Shown in pieces: positions 12,441 to 38,860 of a stretch of 64,000 bases of DNA. The position numbers and the translations under genes were made by a program. The notes beneath the pieces were generated by a model. The model was given only the letters and a program-made list of their open reading frames with translations. It was not told the origin of the DNA and made no database searches. Numbering within the stretch: the first letter of the stretch is position 1; each line of letters opens with the position of its first letter. This stretch comes from Chiloscyllium plagiosum. Lineage: Eukaryota. The DNA lies in the NCBI RefSeq assembly GCF_004010195.1, contig NC_057746.1:9987045-10051044 (forward strand). Reading direction: 5' to 3'.

Positions 12441-13269
12441 GACTGTGCGACTTGACCGATAGCTTGACTTTTGTGTCGGGAATATCTGAAAAAAATATTC
12501 TATTGTTTGAAATAAAATGTGTTTCTGTACGATGTTCTATGTCAACAGCTCTGCTCTTCAGCAAATTGCCTGGTGCACCGTGACTTTGCCATGTTGGAGA
12601 TTCTGCAACATTATGTGAACTCTGAATTTACTGTTTAAAATGCAATGTGATTTTTCACAGTGTTCTAGATATTTTGCCATTCATCGTGTTTGAGACATTG
12701 TAACATGGTGTGGACTTTTGAGTTTACTGTTTAAACTGAGATGTCTTTTCACAATATGTTGTATGTTAATGTCTCTGCTCTCTTTGATCTGTTTTGCTGT
12801 TATGTACTGTGTCTGTGACGTTATGAAAATTTTTGAATATAAGAAAATATAACCGGGAAAAATATTTATGTATAACACCAGGGGATTCAGAATCTCCTTA
12901 CTTCAGAGGCTGACTCAACATGCTGGCCAGAGCAGTGCAATGTGCACTTGTAAACAAAGGGATGATGGAATACCGGCCTCTTTGCACTTACTTTATATCT
13001 GAATCATCCAAAATCCCTTGGTGTACTGAAGTTTGCAGTCCCCATGTGGTGAAGATAATGTATTCTGATTGACCTGTCAACAGTTACAAGGTACTTCAGG
13101 ACTCTCAAAACAAACTGCTAACTTTCGCCTGACAATGGATGATGATCGGCCCTGTCTGTCTATGAATGGTCGAGTCAATAACCGAACGCCCTTCCCAATT
13201 CTGTTTGGTCCACTGGATAGGTAGCCGTAATACTCCTCACTGTTTGGTCTATTTTCACCAGGGAACAGA

Positions 13270-13587
13270 TGCAGACCAATACTTCCCGGGCTGATTGGTC
13301 TCCTCCCGTGGTGTTTCTCTTCTTGATTGGCCACTCTTTGCACGTATAGCGACTCTGATTGGCTTAACTACCTCTCCCCCCCACCCCCCCCCCCCGATTA
13401 TTGAACATTTCTGATTGGATCCTGTCCTTCTGCCTCCAGCATTGATTGGATATTTCATCCTTAATTCTAATTGGTCAGTGATTGTTGAAGTCCTGTCCCA
13501 CTGCCTATCCCTAGTTCTAATTGGCTAGGATGTTTATTTAACGATCTTTCCGGGTAGTTTGGGTTTCAGTCTCTGTCTCTCCCGGGA
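13270..13587 (+). promoter_or_regulatory. MHC class II beta promoter / 5' UTR with seven inverted CCAAT (Y-box-like) motifs
   Basis: (C/T)T(G/A)ATTGG at 13291, 13323, 13355, 13411, 13442, 13467 and 13517, three of them exact CTGATTGG Y-boxes. AT-rich TTTATTTA at 13533, 55 bp before the ATG at 13588. Confidence 0.7.
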
Positions 13588-14369
13588 ATGGATCTGTTTA
13601 GAGTGTCTGATCGCCGCTCCCTCTCGTGGTGTGATCCTTTATGCACGCCCAGACTGTCAGCCGCACCACACACTGCCCTCGAAGCGGCTGCGGAGGGGCC
13701 GAGACTGTCACACACGTCCTTTTGGAATGTGCCTACACAAAGGAAATCTGGAGACGAATGCAGTGGTGCTCGTCGAGGTCCGTCGCGAGCAGCTCTGTTA
13801 TGCAGGACTCCGTGTTCTATAGTCCATTCCCCAAGACACACACGAGACGAACATCAACTGCGCCTGGAGGATCATCAGCTGGGTCAAAAACGCTCTTTGG
13901 TCTATCCGAAACCTGTTGATCTTCCAGCTGAAGGATCTGACCCGACTGAGCGTTGCAGACTGGCACATTCCAAGGTCCAGTACTACATGTTGAGGAACGC
14001 GCTGAAGCTTGGGGCAGCTGCTGCCAAGGCGTGGTGGGGAAAGACCACCATGTAACTTTTGCCTGCCTAAGAACAGGGGGTCCACGCAGTAAGTGGGCTG
14101 CGCTGATGCCTCAGCTAAATGTATGGATATATGATTGGTAAACGTAAGACCTGTATATGCAAATGATAAACTCTGATCTCTGTACGCAAAGAAATGGAAT
14201 GTTTATGTATGTATGGCATGATCAATTGTACAGATCATCAAAATATTTTATGAATAAAGGACATTATTGAAATTAAAAATAAAGTCTGAAAGCCCCTCCC
14301 TCTGGAGCCGGATCCCCCTCCTCATCGGGACATTTATCCTCCTCAATGGAGAGAGAGACAGCGGAGCTG
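13588..14369 (+). pseudogene. MHC IIB exon 1 (leader), split by LINE insertion: 13588-13610 joined to 14290-14369
   Basis: Removing the insert and one TSD restores in-frame MDLFRVSESPSLWSRIPLLIGTFILLNGERDSGA-G, followed by the donor gtgaga at 14370. Confidence 0.88.
13611..14283 (+). mobile_element. 5'-truncated Tx1/L1-clade LINE (ORF2 C-terminal zinc-binding region + 3' UTR)
   Basis: CPRSGCGGAETVTHVLLECAYTKEIW is a zf-RVT-like CCHC motif; C-terminus ...LKLGAAAAKAWWGKTTM*. AATAAA at 14253, A-rich tail, TSD GTCTGA at 13605-13610 and 14284-14289. Confidence 0.9.
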
Positions 14370-15269
14370 GTGAGAGATCCCCGGAGAGGAGCAAACTCTG
14401 CTCTGCCCGAGTCAGAGGGATAGCAGCTCCGGGGTTAGTGGGGATCGAGTGACTACTGGCTATAACCAAGGGGGTCTGCAGTTACCTCCATGTGGGGTCA
14501 GGTCCTGGGACATCACCGCCAGAGGAGCTTGTAGTGATCTGCTCTCTCGAACCCTTTCTCAGACACAGTATGGATCCGTATTCCTGTGCTCACTTTCTGG
14601 TCATCTCCCCTTGACTCTGTCAACAGTATCCTCAATTGGAAAACTATAATGTTTACATAGAAAGTCATTAGCAACGCTTTCTGCGATACTTTGCGTTTCT
14701 ATCTCTATGGTTCACACTTTGGGTGAAATGTAAGGAATGGTTTGCTCCCTCATGTCCTGACGCATTGTCAAGTTTCCATTTTAAACCCATCCTGTATTGA
14801 ATATTGCGTGCAATTCTGGTCTCTTTGGTATTGGAAATATGTTGTGAAACCTGAAAGGGTTCAGAAAAGATTTGCGCTACAGGAAGAGGCTGAGTTGTTT
14901 TCCCGGAGCATTGGAGGTTGAGGGGTGACCTTACACAGAGGAAACTCGATTATCCGAATGAATTGGTGAGGGGTGGTGGTGCGGGGGCACTGTTTCATTC
15001 AGGTTATTGATTATTCGGTTAATTGATTTCCTCTGGGGCTTGAGGTTTTCTGTGAAGTCTGCTCCCCATTCAGGAAAGGAGGTAGCCTTGGCCCCCAACC
15101 CTGCCTGCACCACCAAGCCCGTCTGCCCGTGCCTGATTTCCCACCCCCACGTCCAACCGCACCCACCGTCCAACACCTGTCTGTGCCCCTGCCGCCCCCG
15201 GTTGGTTTGCCCCCATCTCCACGCCCACCCACCCCCAGGGCAGCTGGACTGTACAGAAACAGTAAGACT

Positions 15270-23119: not shown

Positions 23120-23380
23120 AGACTCGCGCCTTGAGTGTAGCTGCCGGCTGTGAGTTTAACAGCTCTGGGAACTGGACCTACTTCGACCAGTTCATCCACC
23201 ACCAACAGCTGATCATGTATTTCGACTTTAGCCAGAAGAGGTTCATTGCAGTGAAGGACTAGATGAAGTATTATGCGGAGAGATTCAGGAAAGAGAGAGG
23301 GGAAGCCATATACCAAGAAGTTCTCGCTATATGTCCGTCTCCCATTGGTATCCTGGAGAGTGAGGTGCTGACCTGGAAAG
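23120..23380 (+). pseudogene. MHC IIB exon 2 (beta1 domain) with in-frame stop
   Basis: cag| (E)TRALSVAAGCEFNSSGNWTYFDQFIHHQQLIMYFDFSQKRFIAVKD*MKYYAERFRKERGEAIYQEVLAICPSPIGILESEVLTWK |gtgaga. Both cysteines and the NSS glycosylation site are kept; TAG at 23260-23262 sits where Trp is expected. Confidence 0.92.
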
Positions 23381-25535: not shown

Positions 25536-25818
25536 TTGAACCGACAGTCACTCTCTGACCTAAAGCATCTCAGCATTCTGCACAGTCAGCTCTGCTCTCA
25601 CGTCATGTCACTAGATTTTACCCTCCCGAGATCAAAGTCGCATGGCTGAAAAATAGAGCACCAATTCCTGGTGGTGTCATCAACACTGTCCTGTTATCAG
25701 ATGTTTACTGGAACTATCAGGTGGAGGATCTCCTCCAGTACCAGCCAGTGTCCGAGGGATAAATTCACCTGTCGTGTGCAACACAGCAGCCTGAATGGAC
25801 GCAAGAATGTGGACTGGT
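25536..25818 (+). pseudogene. MHC IIB exon 3 (beta2 Ig C1 domain), disrupted
   Basis: (V)EPTVTL*PKASQHSAQSALLSRHVTRFYPPEIKVAWLKN...WNYQVEDLLQYQPVS/GDKFTCRVQHSSLNGRKNVDW. C1 motifs FYP and CxVxHxSL are present; stop at 25556, Cys>Arg at 25601, extra base near 25755. Confidence 0.93.
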
Positions 25819-27144: not shown

Positions 27145-27261
27145 AAGTCTGGAGTATTCCTGAATCGGCACATCCAAAGATTGTTGTCGGAGCCCTGTTC
27201 TTTGGGATTTGGCTGATCATCTTGCTGGCTGGAGTGATAATGAGGCTGAAGAATAATAAAG
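27145..27261 (+). pseudogene. MHC IIB exon 4 (connecting peptide/transmembrane)
   Basis: cag|AA-VWSIPESAHPKIVVGALFFGIWLIILLAGVIMRLKNNK-G|gtgag, a class II beta-type PES..KI.VG TM entry. Confidence 0.9.
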
Positions 27262-29135: not shown

Positions 29136-29165
29136 CTATCCTGGACTCCAGCTATCACAGTCCAT
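29136..29165 (+). pseudogene. MHC IIB exon 5 (cytoplasmic tail)
   Basis: Strong polypyrimidine tract and tgcag| (A)ILDSSYHSP-T |gtaagt; phase-compatible with exon 4. Confidence 0.8.
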
Positions 29166-30029
29166 GTAAGTATAACAGCTATTTTGGATGTGGTGAAAGG
29201 AGGAATACTTTCAAACAAGGTTCCAGTTCTGACCAGTAGCAGCATTCCTGTGTAATTCTCGCTGTGAATGCTGTAATGAGCGGAACTAGACTATTAACCC
29301 CTTCAACCTACTTTGCCATTTAATAAGGTTAAGGGTATCTGATGGCCACAATACTGCATTCCTACCTAACCTCAGACAGGTACATCCTGGGTTCGATTGT
29401 AAAACCTCCCCCAGGAAATGTATTGAAGCTGCCCCCAAACCCACTTCATATCAGATTTTGCTGGTTGCAGTGTAAGTTGAACCCTTCCTAGCGGTGAAAC
29501 AGTACTTAACTCACCCCCCCCCCCCGCCCCCTCCACACCCCGTCTGTAATGAGAGAGCAATGAAAGAGGTAATCTCTGGACACTATAGGGATTCTTTGTA
29601 AAACCTGAAGCACCCTGGACCCTACCCTGTCTCAGACTGATCTGTTAGATGTATGAATAATACTGGTTCCTGTCATAAGATCTGAGTCTAGTTTTTTCCT
29701 TCTACCACACGTGACTCCTGATTGCATTGTCATTGCCAATCCTGTATTTTTAATTTATTCAGAGATATGGATTTTTTGCAGACTGCTCACTGTATACCCT
29801 GGAGACGTTGGTGGAGGACTGCTGCTGTCTTGAATTGATGCAGCTCCTTTGGTGTAGGAATACCATGTTATTAAGGAGGGACTCTAGGTATTTCACCAGC
29901 AACAGTGAAAGAATAGTGATGTTTCCGAGTCAGTGATTGCTGTAACTTTTGGAAATTTCTTGAATGGTAATCTACCATCCATTACACAACTGTAAATGTC
30001 TACTGTCAGTATAATGCACAGCTCCAGAG

Positions 30030-31811: not shown

Positions 31812-34071
31812 TTTTCCCCCTTTTTGACATAAACTGACAATAAGGACTACTACAGCAATAACACATTAAATCTAGAGCCAGAATAGCTAAACATCAGAAA
31901 ATGTTAAGGAAACACCAGGCCTTTCCTCACACACCACCTCCCCGAAACACAGCTGTGTGGCGGTATCGTCACTTGCTCTGGTGTGCCCTGTACACAGCCC
32001 ATGTTCACACGTCATACTCGCCAAAGTCATGGTAGTGTGGCGTCCACGCAATGCCCGTGCCCTTATAATAGTCCAACCAGGGCGCTTGCTAAAAGTGTGA
32101 GCTGTGGCAGCCCCATATTCGTATGAAGCTTCTAATCACTACTTGCACTTAATTGGTTCCAGTGCTGTCCGATGTCTCCTCCAGCCCAGCTACACGCTTG
32201 CAATGGCTGGTATATATCCACGTGGCTCTTTCTGCGACTTTAACAGTTGTCTGTATTTCAAGGAGCACTTGAAACGGTCCAAGCCACCTCTTCACCTTCC
32301 AGTTATTCCTCGTGAATTCTTTCACCACTATCCAGTCTACAGGTTCTAGATCATGCAGTTTCCGTCCTGCTGGTTGGGGTAGTGCTGCTTTCACTTGATT
32401 CTGTATTTGTGATAAAAATATATAGAGTTTTATACAGTAATGTAACATCTCATCCTCACAGTGGCTTGTTAGCTGCCTTACCTTATATCTTGGGCCAATT
32501 CTTTTGTTGGGCGGTCTACCAAACAAAATCTCAAATGAGCTAAGGTTAGCTCTTCCTCTCCTCCGAGATCTGATACACATTATCACAATCAGAAGAGACT
32601 TTGTCCATGTCACCTCTAGGTTCTCACAACTTTTTGTCATTTTTTTTTAGGGTAGCACTTTCTCTTTCCACTGCCCCACCGCTCGCTGGGTGTAGGCATC
32701 GTGTTGTCTCATATGTATTCCCAAATAATCACTGATCTGTTGAAATCATTATTGGCAAATGGTGTCCCATTGTCACTACTAAGCCTTTCAGGAATTATTT
32801 CTGTAAGCAAAGCTTTAGCTACTGCACTGGCATCCTGTTTAGACGAAACGCTTCCACCCATTTGGAAAACATATCAACTTTTACCAGGCAATACGTTTTC
32901 CCTTCTTTGGGCGTTAGTTCAATGAAATCCATCTGTAAATATTCAAAGGGTTTTTGGGGTTGGGGGTGTGCTGCCTGACTCATCTCTATTCCTCTCCCCA
33001 CATTATTAGTGACACAGATTACATAACACCCACAATATTTCTGGGAATAATAAGTAATTCCCTTCGTGTACCAGTGTGCTGAAATAATGTCGTACACCAC
33101 CCTCCCCACCCCACTTTTGACACACGGTCCTTACAATGTGTCAGTTTGGCATAGAATGGAAATAATGATCGTGGTAGAGAGGGTTTACAATTGGGGCCAC
33201 ATCATACTCCTTCCCTCGCACTGCAGCCTGCTTTTGTCCACTCACGATTTTCTTCTGATGTGGCCTGTGACTGTAACTCCCGCATGTCTGCTGTTGGGGT
33301 ACAACGTTTTGTTTTACACATGTCAATCTGCTCATTTTGCAGATGCTGTGCTGCCGTTCTTGCTGCTGATTCTGCCTTTGCATTGCCTTTGGAAATAAAA
33401 TCATTTTTGTGTGTGGGCTTCACATTTACACACAACGATTGATTTGGGCAATACGACCTCTTCCAGGAGGTCAGAAATCAGGCTACGGTGTGAGATGGGC
33501 TTTCCAGTGGAGATAAAGAAGCATCCTGTGTTTCCACAGGTTTCTGAAATCATGTACAATCTCCAATTAATATCTACTATTGGTGTAAATATTCAGTGTC
33601 TTTCCCTCAGCTAATTTACATGCCTCAGTCAAGGCAATCAGCTCTGCTGCTTGCGCTGACAGATGAGAAGGGAGTGATCCCGCTTTGACAATCTCGTAGA
33701 TAATCACTACAACATACCCAAAACAATTCCAGCCTGTCTCCTTGCTCCTGAATGCTGACCCGTCCACAAAAAAAACTCCATATCTGATTTCTGAAGTGGT
33801 GAATCCTGCAAATCTTGTCGAGGGCTGCAAATCTCATTCGTTACTGGGACATAATCATGTGGGTCTCTGTCGACTTCTGTGGGGAGAAGGCAAGCAGGGT
33901 TTAGGACGTTACATCACTTTATTGTAAAGTTAGACATCTCCAAGAGCACAGTATTATATCTGAGCCAACGTGCTGCTGACATGTGTGCGGCCATTTCCTC
34001 GGATAGAAGTAAGGATACTGAATGTGGGACCAGACGGGTTAATTCACCATAGCCGACTATAACCCTGGATA

Positions 34072-37000: not shown

Positions 37001-38860
37001 CTCGTGGGCACCTCCTCCTACTGCCCCTTGACCATGGCCCCACCTCCCACCACCAAACCATCATTTCCAGACCATACATAGCCTCATCACCTCAGGGGAA
37101 ATCCCATTCACCACCTCCAACCTCATAGTCCCACAACCCCGCACTGCCCGTTTCTACCTCCTGACCAAAATCCACAAACCTGACTGCCCCAGGCGACCCA
37201 TTGTCTCAGCCTGCTCCTGCCCCACCATACTCATTTCTGCATACCTTGACACGGTCCTGTCATCCTTAGTCCAAGAACTCCCCACTTACGTTCGGGACAC
37301 CACCCACGCCCTCCACCTCCTCCATGATTTTCACATCCCCGGCCCACAACGCCTTATTTTCACCATTGACATCCAGTCCCAATACACCTTCATCCCCCAT
37401 CACGAAGGCCACAAAGCCCCCCGCTTCTTCCTTTGCTGTCGAATCAACCAGTACCCTTACACTGACACCCTCCTTCCAATGATTGAACTGGTCCTCACTC
37501 TGAACAACTTCTCTTTCCAATCCTCCCACTTCCTCCAAACCAAAGGAGTAGCCATGGGCACCGGCATGGGCCCCAGCTATGCCTGCCTCTTCGTTGGATA
37601 TGTGGAACAGTCCATCTTCCGCAGCTACACTGGCACCACCCCCCACCTTTTCCTCCGCTACATCGATGACTGTAACGGGGCTACCTCGTGCTCCCACGAG
37701 GAGGTTGAACTGTTCATCCACTTTACTAACACCTTCCACCCTGACCTTAAATTTACTTGGACCGTCTCAGACTCCTCCCTCCCCTTCCTCGACCTCACCA
37801 TTTCTATCTCAGACGACCGACTCAACACGGATGTTTACTATAAACCGACTGACTCCCACAGCTACCTAGATTACACCTCCTCCCACCTTGCCCCCTGTAA
37901 AAACGCAATCCCATATTCCCTATTCCTTCACCTTTGCCGCATCAGCTCCCAGGAGGACGAATTCCACTACCGAACAACCCAGATACATCGTATCATTCTT
38001 CATCATTTCCACCACCTCCAAACAGACCCCACCACCAAGGAGATATTTCCCTCCCCACCCCTATCAGTGTTCCGGAAAGACCACTCCTTCCGCGACTTCC
38101 TCGTCAGATCTACAGCCCACACCAACACAACCTCCACTCCCAGCACCTTCCCCTGCAACCGCAAGAAATGCAAAACTTGCGCCCACACCTCCCCCCTCAC
38201 TTCCCTCCAAGGCACCAAGGGATCCTTCCATACCCGTCAGAAATTTACCTGCACCTCCACACACATCATTTACTGCATCTGCTATACCCGATATGGCCTC
38301 TTATACATTGGGGAGACAGGCCGACTACTTGCAGAACGTTTCAGAGAACACCTCTGGGACACCCGCACCAACCAACCCAACCACCCTGTGGCTGAACACT
38401 TTAACTCCCCCTCCCACTCCGCCAAGGACATGCAGGTCCTTGGCCTCCTCCATCGCCAGGCCATGGCAACACGACGTCTGGAGGAAGAGCACCTCATCTT
38501 CCGCTGATGAACCCTCCAACCACAAGGGATGAATGCAGATTTCTCCAGCTTTCTCATTTTCCCTTCCCCAAAATTTTCTCAGTCTCAACCCTCAGACTCA
38601 GCACCGCATTCTTGACCTGCAATCTTCTTCCCGACCTCTCCGCCCCCAACCCCTCTCCGGCCTATCACCCTCACCTTAACCTCCTTCCACCTGTCATATT
38701 CCCAGCGCCTCTCCCCCAAGTCCCTCCTCCCTATCTTTTATCTTAGCCTGCTTGGCACTCCCTCCTCATTCCTGAAGGAGGGCTTTGCCCGAAACATTGA
38801 TTATCCTGTTCCTTTGATGCTGCCTGACCTGCTGCGCTTTTCCAGCAACACATTTTTAAG
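34072..38860 (+). mobile_element. Near full-length Penelope-like element (RT + GIY-YIG, direct pLTRs) inserted in ERV pol
   Basis: TSD ctataacc(c/t)tggata at 34057-34071 and 38861-38875. ORF 37479-38507 has QTKGVAMGT, FLRYIDDC and IIYCICYTRYGLLYIGETGR; hammerhead-bearing repeats sit at both ends. Confidence 0.93.
34395..36035 (+). mobile_element. 5'-truncated Penelope copy of a second subfamily nested in the outer Penelope
   Basis: Abrupt jump from the N-terminal region (HSHITFLS) into RT (RRPQEYPSTDTLI...YIDD), GIY-YIG region near 35370-35430 and a distinct pLTR variant near 35900-36035; the outer element then resumes. Confidence 0.8.

What the first reader, a model, noticed from the sequence alone, without database searches (positions are those of the whole stretch)
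13588..14369. A Tx1-type LINE landed in codon 8 of an MHC class II beta leader: a natural gene trap
Seen: a 673-bp 5'-truncated LINE sits between two copies of GTCTGA (13605-13610 and 14284-14289). Excising it restores an in-frame leader, MDLFRVSESPSLWSRIPLLIGTFILLNGERDSGA, ending at a GT donor. The insert is in sense orientation and brings its own AATAAA (14253) and A-tail. Inference: transcripts from the MHC promoter would be polyadenylated inside exon 1. This could be the founding knockout of the gene, or a later hit on an already dead gene.
Basis: partly seen in the sequence, partly recalled or inferred. Interest (0 to 1): 0.8.

Follow-up and report, generated by a model that had tools for sequence, protein, structure and literature searches.

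The report
Old LINE insertion in shark MHC pseudogene
A fragment of a jumping gene sits inside the first exon of a dead shark immune (MHC class II beta) gene; it is real, ancient and shared with a related species, but it is an ordinary kind of gene-killing event and only one of at least six defects in this gene.

Summary
The insertion is real, but its anatomy needs correcting. The ATG at 13588, both GTCTGA copies, the AATAAA at 14253 and the GT donor at 14370 are all there.

**Target-site duplication.** It is about 32 bp (13605-13637 and 14284-14315), not 6 bp, so the LINE itself is 13638-14283 (646 bp). Intact whale-shark and bamboo-shark class II beta chains start MDLFRVSD.../MDLYRVCD.... 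Leader residues 7-12 occur twice in the window.

**The gene.** It is a pseudogene with several lesions:
- TAG in beta1
- TGA, a lost Ig cysteine and a +1 frameshift in beta2
- a stop at the exon 3/4 junction codon

**Age.** Contigs of a second species cross both junctions. A second, about 87% identical copy in the same species carries the 3' junction. The insertion is therefore old and fixed.

**Polyadenylation.** RNA reads show that the family's 3' end at 14283 is followed by poly(A). I found no transcript assignable to this locus.

**Open points.** Whether the insertion was the first lesion is unresolved. The "Tx1" label is plausible but untested, because the copy has no reverse-transcriptase domain.

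This is a new example of a known kind of event, of low to moderate interest. The scan noted a similar leader insertion 527 kb away (s1-886024).

The parts
13291..13418 (+). Promoter-like region: the only three exact CTGATTGG (Y-box/CCAAT-type) motifs of the 64-kb window, within 300 bp upstream of the ATG
   Evidence: 3 matches in the window, all here (3.4 expected over the whole window, so it is the clustering and not the number that stands out). The motif name is recalled. Function not tested.
13588..13604 (+). Start of exon 1: ATG and leader codons 1-6 (first two bases of codon 6)
   Evidence: 13588-13623 is 11/12 identical to residues 1-12 of whale-shark class II beta P0081.
13605..13637 (+). 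Target-site duplication, upstream copy (leader codons 6-17, with a 3-nt insertion and substitutions)
   Evidence: 25/33 columns; 0/2000 shuffles. (it encodes SDRRSL, as intact leaders do). (single-copy depth through 13623).
13638..14283 (+). 5'-truncated LINE 3' end (L1 superfamily, possibly Tx1 clade), in sense to the MHC gene. It holds the last ~140 codons of ORF2 with two frameshifts (near 13800-13830 and near 13936-13941), a Cys-His knuckle at 13674-13730, the ORF stop TAA at 14053-55, a 3' UTR, AATAAA at 14253-58 and the A-rich tail to 14283
   Evidence: three frames. (zf-RVT, E 0.004, below cut-off). (summed contig depth 10^3-10^4 times the single-copy depth in three species; 73 RNA reads continue as poly(A) after 14283).
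14284..14315 (+). Target-site duplication, downstream copy
   Evidence: table 3: the second copy and species B read C at 14291, G at 14295 and T at 14307. That brings the first 20 nt of the two repeat copies from 17/20 to 19/20 identical (counted by eye).
14316..14369 (+). Rest of exon 1 (hydrophobic core and end of the signal peptide), ending in phase 1; GT donor at 14370-71
   Evidence: 14285-14380 is 24/32 to P0081 residues 7-38..
23120..23380 (+). Exon 2 (beta1 domain), in phase with exon 1. Both cysteines and the NSS site are kept. In-frame TAG at 23260-62, where intact relatives have Trp
   Evidence: (54/84 to C. plagiosum P0076).
25536..25818 (+). Exon 3 (beta2, Ig C1-set). It has a TGA at 25556-58 in place of Arg, the Ig cysteine changed to Arg (CGT at 25601-03), a one-base insertion near 25753-57 (the exon is 283 nt where 282 are expected), and a last base T at 25818 that would make the exon 3/4 junction codon a stop
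   Evidence: 61/73 to P0076; Pfam C1-set 35.8 bits, cut-off 21.
27145..27261 (+). Exon 4 (connecting peptide, transmembrane segment, start of tail), open
   Evidence: (34/39 to P0076).
29136..29166 (+). Exon 5 (cytoplasmic tail, AILDSSYHSP), open
   Evidence: (8/10, E 6.5 on its own; the acceptor, donor and phase fit).

Best explanation
Shown: this is an ancient, fixed retrotransposon insertion in the signal-peptide exon of a bamboo-shark-type MHC class II beta gene.

The anatomy is that of target-primed reverse transcription (inferred from it). A 5'-truncated 646-bp 3' end of an abundant poly(A)-tailed LINE (L1 superfamily, probably Tx1 clade) lies in sense orientation. It is flanked by a staggered-break duplication of about 32 bp covering leader codons 6-17.

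The insertion alone is a null mutation (inferred from the reading frame). Translation from the ATG runs out of the leader after codon 13 into LINE sequence, so no hydrophobic signal core is made. The LINE's own AATAAA and cleavage site would also be expected to end transcripts at about 14283 (inferred; for the family, RNA reads do continue as poly(A) after that position).

Shown: the gene now carries at least five further lesions and is a pseudogene. The insertion predates the split from a second species, and probably predates a duplication that made a second copy in the same genome.

Not settled: whether the insertion came first.
For: - Boundaries and repeat.
- Leader identity: P0081 starts and P0083 contains MDLFRVSDSRSLWIRIPLLIGTFILLNGGRDSG; P0076 starts MDLYRVCDPRSLW.... 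tblastn gives 11/12 and 24/32, with residues 7-12 matched twice.
- Class II beta identity of the relatives: names given by NCBI and UniRef. The best solved-structure hits of P0076 are HLA-DQ and HLA-DR beta chains (E 5.9e-39). The window's beta2 piece hits C1-set at 35.8 bits.
- Lesions.
- Reads: X1 record 3 spans the 5' junction (13461-13686, 5 differences). Species B record 9 (12763-13653, 86 differences) crosses 13637/13638, and a contig of about 116 nt (14246-14361, derived from the from_end values) crosses 14283/14284. X1 record 5, at depth 8 against about 20 for the window's own copy, runs from 14177 to 14393 with 28 differences; it is a second copy with the same 3' junction.
- Family poly(A): 73 RNA reads with an A-run after 14283.
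- Decay of comparable age: 11-12 private replacements in 67 beta2 codons, against 2/67 between the two Chiloscyllium species. Two frameshifts in the LINE ORF.
Against: - The 5' junction of the second copy in organism A was not seen. Record 2 stops at 13631, inside the repeat, so on its own it could also come from an uninserted paralogue.
- Organism C gives no junction information; its contig starts at 14311.
- X1 may be the sample the assembly was made from, so it is not independent support.
- The far end of the repeat (13625-13637) aligns poorly. The duplication could be as short as about 22-25 bp.
- No read evidence that this locus is transcribed or polyadenylated.
- The clade of the LINE is unproven.
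Confidence: 0.85

Rival explanations
1. Later hit: the class II beta copy had already lost function (a stop codon, or loss of its alpha partner or of expression) when the LINE landed. The insertion is one neutral event among many in a decaying pseudogene.
For: - At least five other lesions exist.
- Introns and flanks are full of retroelements, so neutral insertions are common here.
- Private beta2 replacements (11-12 in 67 codons) suggest relaxed constraint for at least as long as the divergence from the second copy (about 12.7%, 106/837).
Against: - The insertion is at least as old as the split from species B and from the second copy. It therefore falls in the earliest part of the pseudogene's history.
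- Both repeat copies still encode a normal leader segment (S-D/E-R-R-S-L-W once the letters of species B are used), so the target exon was intact when hit.
- An exon of about 100 bp is a small target for a neutral hit.
Confidence: 0.45
2. Founding knockout: the LINE insertion inactivated a working but redundant class II beta gene. The stops and the frameshift followed, and the dead gene was later copied by segmental duplication.
For: - Same age arguments as above.
- Divergence between the two repeat copies (3/20 to 8/33) is of the same order as the private decay of beta2, though the error is very wide.
- The insertion is by itself sufficient for a null.
Against: - No ordering data.
- With six or more lesions, the prior for any one of them being first is low.
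Confidence: 0.4
3. Assembly artefact or chimeric join: the LINE was misplaced into exon 1 by the assembler.
For: None beyond the general difficulty of assembling repeats. Window letter A at 14352 is not seen in any contig of X1, X10 or X15; all read G.
Against: Independent short-read contigs of a different species and study cross both junctions. An X1 contig crosses the 5' junction. The duplicated target is the signature of a real insertion.
Confidence: 0.02

Closest known systems
Primate DRB6 class II beta pseudogene with an integrated MMTV-related retroviral LTR
   Same: It is an MHC class II beta gene thought to have been inactivated long ago by a retroelement at its 5' end. The integration is shared across species (human, chimpanzee, macaque), and the pseudogene has been kept and copied within the class II region (passages of PMC11610599 read, which cites Mayer et al. 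1993; that paper was not seen).
   Different: There the element is an LTR in intron 1 that replaced the promoter and exon 1 and now drives transcription. Here it is a promoterless 3' fragment of a non-LTR LINE inside exon 1, with the native promoter region still upstream. No transcription of the shark locus was seen.
Sense-oriented L1 insertions that truncate host transcripts by premature polyadenylation ('gene breaking')
   Same: A sense-oriented LINE with AATAAA lies inside a transcription unit, and the family's 3' end is used as a poly(A) site in RNA.
   Different: The mammalian cases are mostly intronic and use internal L1 signals. This knowledge is recalled: only the reference-list entries for Perepelitsa-Belancio & Deininger 2003 and Han et al. 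2004 were seen. Here the insert is exonic and breaks the coding frame as well, and truncation at this locus is not shown.
Tx1 / L1-like LINEs of cartilaginous fish
   Same: It has a poly(A)-type tail, a target-site duplication and a Cys-His knuckle after the RT. The whale-shark genome paper says sharks lack full L1 but have 'Tx1 L1-like repeats' (PMC8455134, section 31 passage).
   Different: Clade membership rests on RT phylogeny, which this truncated copy cannot give. The target here is not A/T-rich and is a single site, so no target specificity can be claimed.
Elasmobranch MHC class II beta chains (e.g. Chiloscyllium plagiosum 'MHC class II antigen beta chain' P0076; Rhincodon typus P0081 and P0083)
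   Same: Same exon plan and phases. The leader is almost identical. Identity to P0076 is 61/73 in beta2 and 34/39 in the transmembrane exon.
   Different: The window's gene has the LINE insertion, three stop codons, a frameshift and a lost Ig cysteine.

Membership tests
MHC class II beta chain gene | Leader exon ending in phase 1 and homologous to the leaders of known class II beta chains | tested here: met
   11/12 and 24/32 to whale-shark P0081. G|GT at 14369/70, and exon 2 continues the frame.
MHC class II beta chain gene | Beta1 domain with the conserved cysteine pair and N-glycosylation site | tested here: met
   GCEFNSS... and ...AICPS align with P0076 (54/84). Pfam MHC_II_beta gave no hit on the two short pieces. 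It is only sub-threshold on intact P0081 (E 0.0034, 18 bits against 20.9), so the Pfam model is weak for this lineage as a whole.
MHC class II beta chain gene | Membrane-proximal Ig C1-set domain | tested here: met
   C1-set 35.8 bits (cut-off 21) on 25559-25759. The first Ig cysteine is mutated to Arg.
MHC class II beta chain gene | The closest intact relatives are class II beta chains | tested here: met
   (source names); the best solved-structure matches of P0076 are HLA-DQ and HLA-DR beta chains, E 5.9e-39.
MHC class II beta chain gene | Open reading frame (functional gene) | tested here: not met
   LINE in exon 1, TAG at 23260, TGA at 25556, a +1 frameshift, and a stop at the exon 3/4 junction codon. 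It is a pseudogene of the family.
L1-superfamily LINE (L1/Tx1) | A-rich or poly(A) 3' end with a polyadenylation signal, flanked by a target-site duplication | tested here: met
   73 RNA reads carry an A-run after 14283.
L1-superfamily LINE (L1/Tx1) | Cys-His zinc knuckle downstream of the RT in ORF2 | tested here: inconclusive
   a C-x4-C-x7-H-x4-C pattern at 13674-13730, seen by eye; zf-RVT E 0.004, 18.2 bits, below the cut-off of 27.5; no solved-structure match; only a weak atlas lead to zf-RVT.
Tx1 clade | RT (and AP-endonuclease) domain grouping with Tx1 elements in a phylogeny | not testable with these tools
   The copy is truncated downstream of the RT, and no full-length family member could be fetched. 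The only support is the literature statement that sharks have Tx1-like but no full L1 elements.
Tx1 clade | Sequence-specific target choice (typical of many Tx1-clade elements; recalled) | not tested
   One site only. Earlier notes s1-883676 and s1-886024 are untested leads.
Natural poly(A) gene trap | Chimeric transcript from the host promoter ending at the insert's poly(A) site | tested here: inconclusive
   about 2 in 100 of one single-cell poly(A) run was read. Only 2 of 865 laid reads are 99% or more alike, and there is no depth in 13470-13546. Family-level poly(A) use is seen; locus-level use is not.

The most novel reading that the evidence does not exclude
The LINE family may have a target preference for this leader sequence. 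In that case the similar 'leader exon with Tx1 insertion' noted 527 kb away (s1-886024) would be an independent hit, not a copy of this one. A site-selective Tx1-clade element would then have repeatedly disabled class II beta genes in this shark lineage. My data do not exclude this for the second copy, whose 5' truncation point I did not see. They argue against it for species B, which shares the truncation point.
Probability: 0.05. Interest if true: 0.6.

Novelty: new member of a known kind. Interest (0 to 1): 0.2.

Why it matters
This is a clean, datable example of a retroelement disrupting an antigen-presentation gene in a cartilaginous fish. The insertion is shared across copies and species, so it can serve as a marker for the history of duplications in the expanded class II region of carpet sharks (Orectolobiformes).

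If the other copies carry the insertion but not the stop codons, it would document a LINE as the founding lesion of an MHC pseudogene family.

It does not reveal a new mechanism. Insertional knockouts, premature polyadenylation by LINEs and retroelement-inactivated class II beta pseudogenes (DRB6) are all known.

Tried and rejected
**Searches that gave nothing**
- A protein search with the 155-aa ORF that runs from the MHC ATG through the LINE was blank (233 candidates, none scored).
- A search with the 148-aa antisense ORF over exon 2 was also blank (27 candidates). This ORF is codon-aligned with the sense frame. I hoped it would pull the same ORF from the second copy or from other species and so show whether the TAG is shared.
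- Classifying the LINE through solved structures (only a chance hit, E 1.1) and through the protein atlas (weak zf-RVT lead) led nowhere.
- The search of earlier findings by sequence was blank.
- Rfam at gathering thresholds over the whole window: 0 matches.
- blastn of the insert, promoter and exons against the window found no second copy inside the window.

**Readings rejected**
- A 6-bp duplication with a 673-bp insert: replaced, see above.
- An assembly artefact: contradicted.
- A coincidental upstream ATG: contradicted by the 11/12 match to the whale-shark leader.
- RNA reads on 14317-14393 as evidence that this locus is transcribed. They carry G at 14352 and mostly T at 14307, which are the intact-leader states also found in all DNA contigs. 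There is no depth in the next intron bin. They therefore fit spliced mRNAs of intact paralogues and cannot be assigned to this locus.

**Literature**
- Searches (listings and abstract starts only) showed no paper describing this insertion. This is not proof that none exists.
- Supplementary files were not opened. The repeat tables of PMC8455134 (its Supplementary files 20-21) could bear on the Tx1 label.

Full report
**What is in the sequence.**
- ATG at 13588.
- GTCTGA at 13605-13610 and at 14284-14289.
- AATAAA at 14253-14258.
- An A-rich tail ending at 14283.
- Exon 1 ending G|GT at 14369/14370.

The three-frame translation of the stretch between shows the tail of a LINE ORF2 on the + strand. 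There is a Cys-His knuckle (C-x4-C-x7-H-x4-C, 13674-13730). The reading frame then has to be followed through two frameshifts (near 13800-13830 and near 13936-13941) to the stop TAA at 14053-55. About 230 nt of 3' UTR follow. Pfam gives only a sub-threshold zf-RVT hit (E 0.004, 18.2 bits against 27.5). No other copy of the insert or of the exons lies in the window.

**The target-site duplication is about 32 bp.** A profile-free search with the beta2 piece and a follow-up search returned intact elasmobranch class II beta chains. Their N-termini settle the leader:
- Whale-shark P0081 starts, and P0083 contains, MDLFRVSDSRSLWIRIPLLIGTFILLNGGRDSG.
- Chiloscyllium plagiosum P0076 starts MDLYRVCDPRSLW....
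- C. punctatum P0079 has ...CRVSDRRSLWIGIPLL.

In tblastn, window 13588-13623 (MDLFRVSDRRSL) matches P0081 residues 1-12 at 11/12. Window 14285-14380 matches residues 7-38 at 24/32. Residues 7-12 are therefore encoded twice.

At the DNA level, 13605-13637 aligns with 14284-14315 at 25 of 33 columns. 0 of 2000 shuffles and 3 of 2000 random window pairs reach that score.

Depth agrees. Bin 13547-13623 is at single-copy depth in all three DNA runs. Repeat-level depth starts in bin 13624-13700.

The second copy and species B read C at 14291, G at 14295 and T at 14307 (table 3). This raises the identity of the first 20 nt of the repeat from 17/20 to 19/20 (by eye) and restores ...RRSLWI.... The LINE proper is therefore 13638-14283 (646 bp). 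The far end of the repeat (13625-13637) aligns poorly, so the duplication could be as short as about 22-25 bp.

| Exon | Coordinates | Content | State |
|---|---|---|---|
| 1 | 13588-14369 | leader | interrupted by the LINE |
| 2 | 23120-23380 | beta1, in phase | cysteines and NSS kept; TAG at 23260-62 where relatives have Trp |
| 3 | 25536-25818 | beta2 (C1-set 35.8 bits) | TGA at 25556-58 in place of Arg; Ig cysteine changed to Arg (25601-03); one extra base near 25753-57 (283 nt, 282 expected); final T that makes the junction codon with exon 4 a stop |
| 4 | 27145-27261 | connecting peptide, transmembrane segment | open |
| 5 | 29136-29166 | cytoplasmic tail | open |

Sources.

The nearest intact relatives are Chiloscyllium chains: 61/73 in beta2, 34/39 in the transmembrane exon and 54/84 in beta1 against P0076. 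Over the 67-aa beta2 piece, the window matches both Chiloscyllium chains at 55/67 and whale shark at 51/67. The two Chiloscyllium species match each other at 65/67. The window thus carries about 11-12 private replacements, a sign of long relaxed constraint. P0076 is a bona fide class II beta chain (solved-structure hits HLA-DQ and HLA-DR beta, E 5.9e-39). By these similarities it is a carpet shark close to the bamboo sharks.

**Reads.** The stretch 12700-15000 was laid at 85% likeness on four runs: X1 (organism A), X10 (organism B), X15 (organism C) and X21 (single-cell poly(A) RNA of organism A, about 2 in 100 of the run read).

- *Organism A.* Record 3 spans the 5' junction (13461-13686, 5 differences). 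X1 may be the assembly's own sample.
- *Second copy in organism A.* A second set of contigs has depth about 8, against about 20 for the window's copy. It is about 87% identical. Record 2 covers 12795-13631 with 106 differences and 13 gaps. Record 5 covers 14177-14393 with 28 differences and 14469-14763 with 32. Record 5 joins the LINE 3' end to exon 1 exactly as in the window. Record 2 stops inside the upstream repeat, so it does not prove the 5' junction.
- *Organism B.* This is a different study. Record 9 (12763-13653, 86 differences) runs 16 nt past 13637 into the LINE. A contig covering about 14246-14361 (derived from the from_end values in table 3) crosses the 3' junction. Organism B thus shares both junctions, including the 5' truncation point, which marks a single ancestral event.
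- *Organism C.* It is uninformative: its contig starts at 14311.
- *Family abundance.* Summed depth over the LINE reaches 10^3-10^4 times the single-copy depth in all three species. The tool warns that this is not a copy number.
- *RNA.* 865 reads were laid. Only 2 are 99% or more alike, and 844 lie only partly on the stretch. 73 reads end at 14283 and go on as an A-run. There is no depth in 13470-13546 or in 14394-14470.
- *Reads on 14317-14393.* They carry G at 14352 (13 of 13) and T at 14307 (5 of 6). These are the states of intact leaders and of all DNA contigs. They are best read as spliced mRNAs of intact paralogues.

**How it works.**
- Shown: a sense-oriented LINE 3' fragment with a long duplication of the target lies in the signal-peptide exon. 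The target exon was intact when hit, because both repeat copies encode normal leader residues.
- Inferred: insertion by target-primed reverse transcription with early 5' truncation.
- Inferred from the sequence: it is a null allele whatever the 3'-end processing. The ATG frame leaves the leader after codon 13 and runs 155 codons through LINE sequence, so the hydrophobic core is never translated.
- Supported for the family only: transcripts in sense would be cleaved and polyadenylated at about 14283.

**Ordering.** The insertion predates the divergence from species B (about 9.7%, 86/891) and probably from the second copy (about 12.7%, 106/837). The private decay of beta2 and the divergence of the two repeat copies are of the same order, with wide errors. 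The insertion is therefore early, but 'first' is not shown. I put founding at about 0.4 and later hit at about 0.45.

**Comparison with what is known.** The closest analogue inside the MHC is primate DRB6. It is a class II beta pseudogene thought to have been inactivated long ago by an MMTV-related LTR, shared by human, chimpanzee and macaque (passages of PMC11610599). Truncation of host transcripts by sense LINEs is textbook knowledge for mammalian L1. It is recalled here; only reference-list entries were seen.

The 'Tx1' label fits the statement that whale shark has no full L1 but has Tx1 L1-like repeats (PMC8455134, section 31 passage). It cannot be tested on a copy without an RT domain.

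I found no paper on this particular insertion in the listings.

The scan itself noted a similar leader insertion 527 kb beyond this window (s1-886024, 805 letters against 782 here). It fits the second copy seen in the reads, but I did not read that DNA.

**Verdict.** The feature is real, and its anatomy is corrected: a 32-bp duplication and a 646-bp LINE. It is a new example of a known kind of event, in a multi-lesion pseudogene. Interest is low to moderate. Its main value is as a shared marker for reconstructing duplications of the class II region in these sharks.

Noticed in passing
window 13291-13418 (wider: 13270-13545): All three exact CTGATTGG motifs of the 64-kb window lie within 130 bp, just upstream of the leader ATG, among further ATTGG repeats. 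This looks like a multi-Y-box class II promoter, as noted in s1-886292. No clear X box with normal spacing was seen by eye.
   Followed up: partly
window 25818 with 27145-27146: The last base of exon 3 is T where intact relatives need G. The spliced junction codon with exon 4 would therefore be a stop.
   Followed up: partly
window 14352: The window reads A (Glu codon), but every DNA contig of organisms A, B and C and 13 of 13 RNA reads read G (Gly, as in intact leaders). It is either a private allele of the assembled individual or a consensus error.
   Followed up: no
window 14779-14932: A short CR1-like fragment (LEYCVQFWS motif) has the highest summed contig depth of the stretch, about 10^6 in all three species. 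It is also abundant in the RNA run on both strands.
   Followed up: no
window 13588-14055: The MHC ATG opens a 155-codon ORF that crosses the LINE, mostly out of the ORF2 frame, and ends at the ORF2 stop. This is a long open stretch for a wrong frame. It is probably chance in GC-rich sequence, and a protein search found nothing.
   Followed up: partly
window 32152-32640 (-) and 37479-38504 (+): An ORF with an MLV-type integrase C-terminal domain (E 9.2e-08) fits the endogenous retrovirus noted in s1-885810. A weak GIY-YIG hit (E 0.00055, below cut-off) suggests a Penelope-like fragment. The high-GC, strongly C-skewed block at 34-38 kb was not explained.
   Followed up: no
proteins P0003, P0060-P0084: Precomputed Pfam lists for these elasmobranch class II beta chains lack MHC_II_beta (PF00969). 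A direct scan of whale-shark P0081 gives only 18 bits against a cut-off of 20.9. The divergent beta1 is a trait of the whole lineage and is not special to this pseudogene, which bears on note s1-886134.
   Followed up: partly
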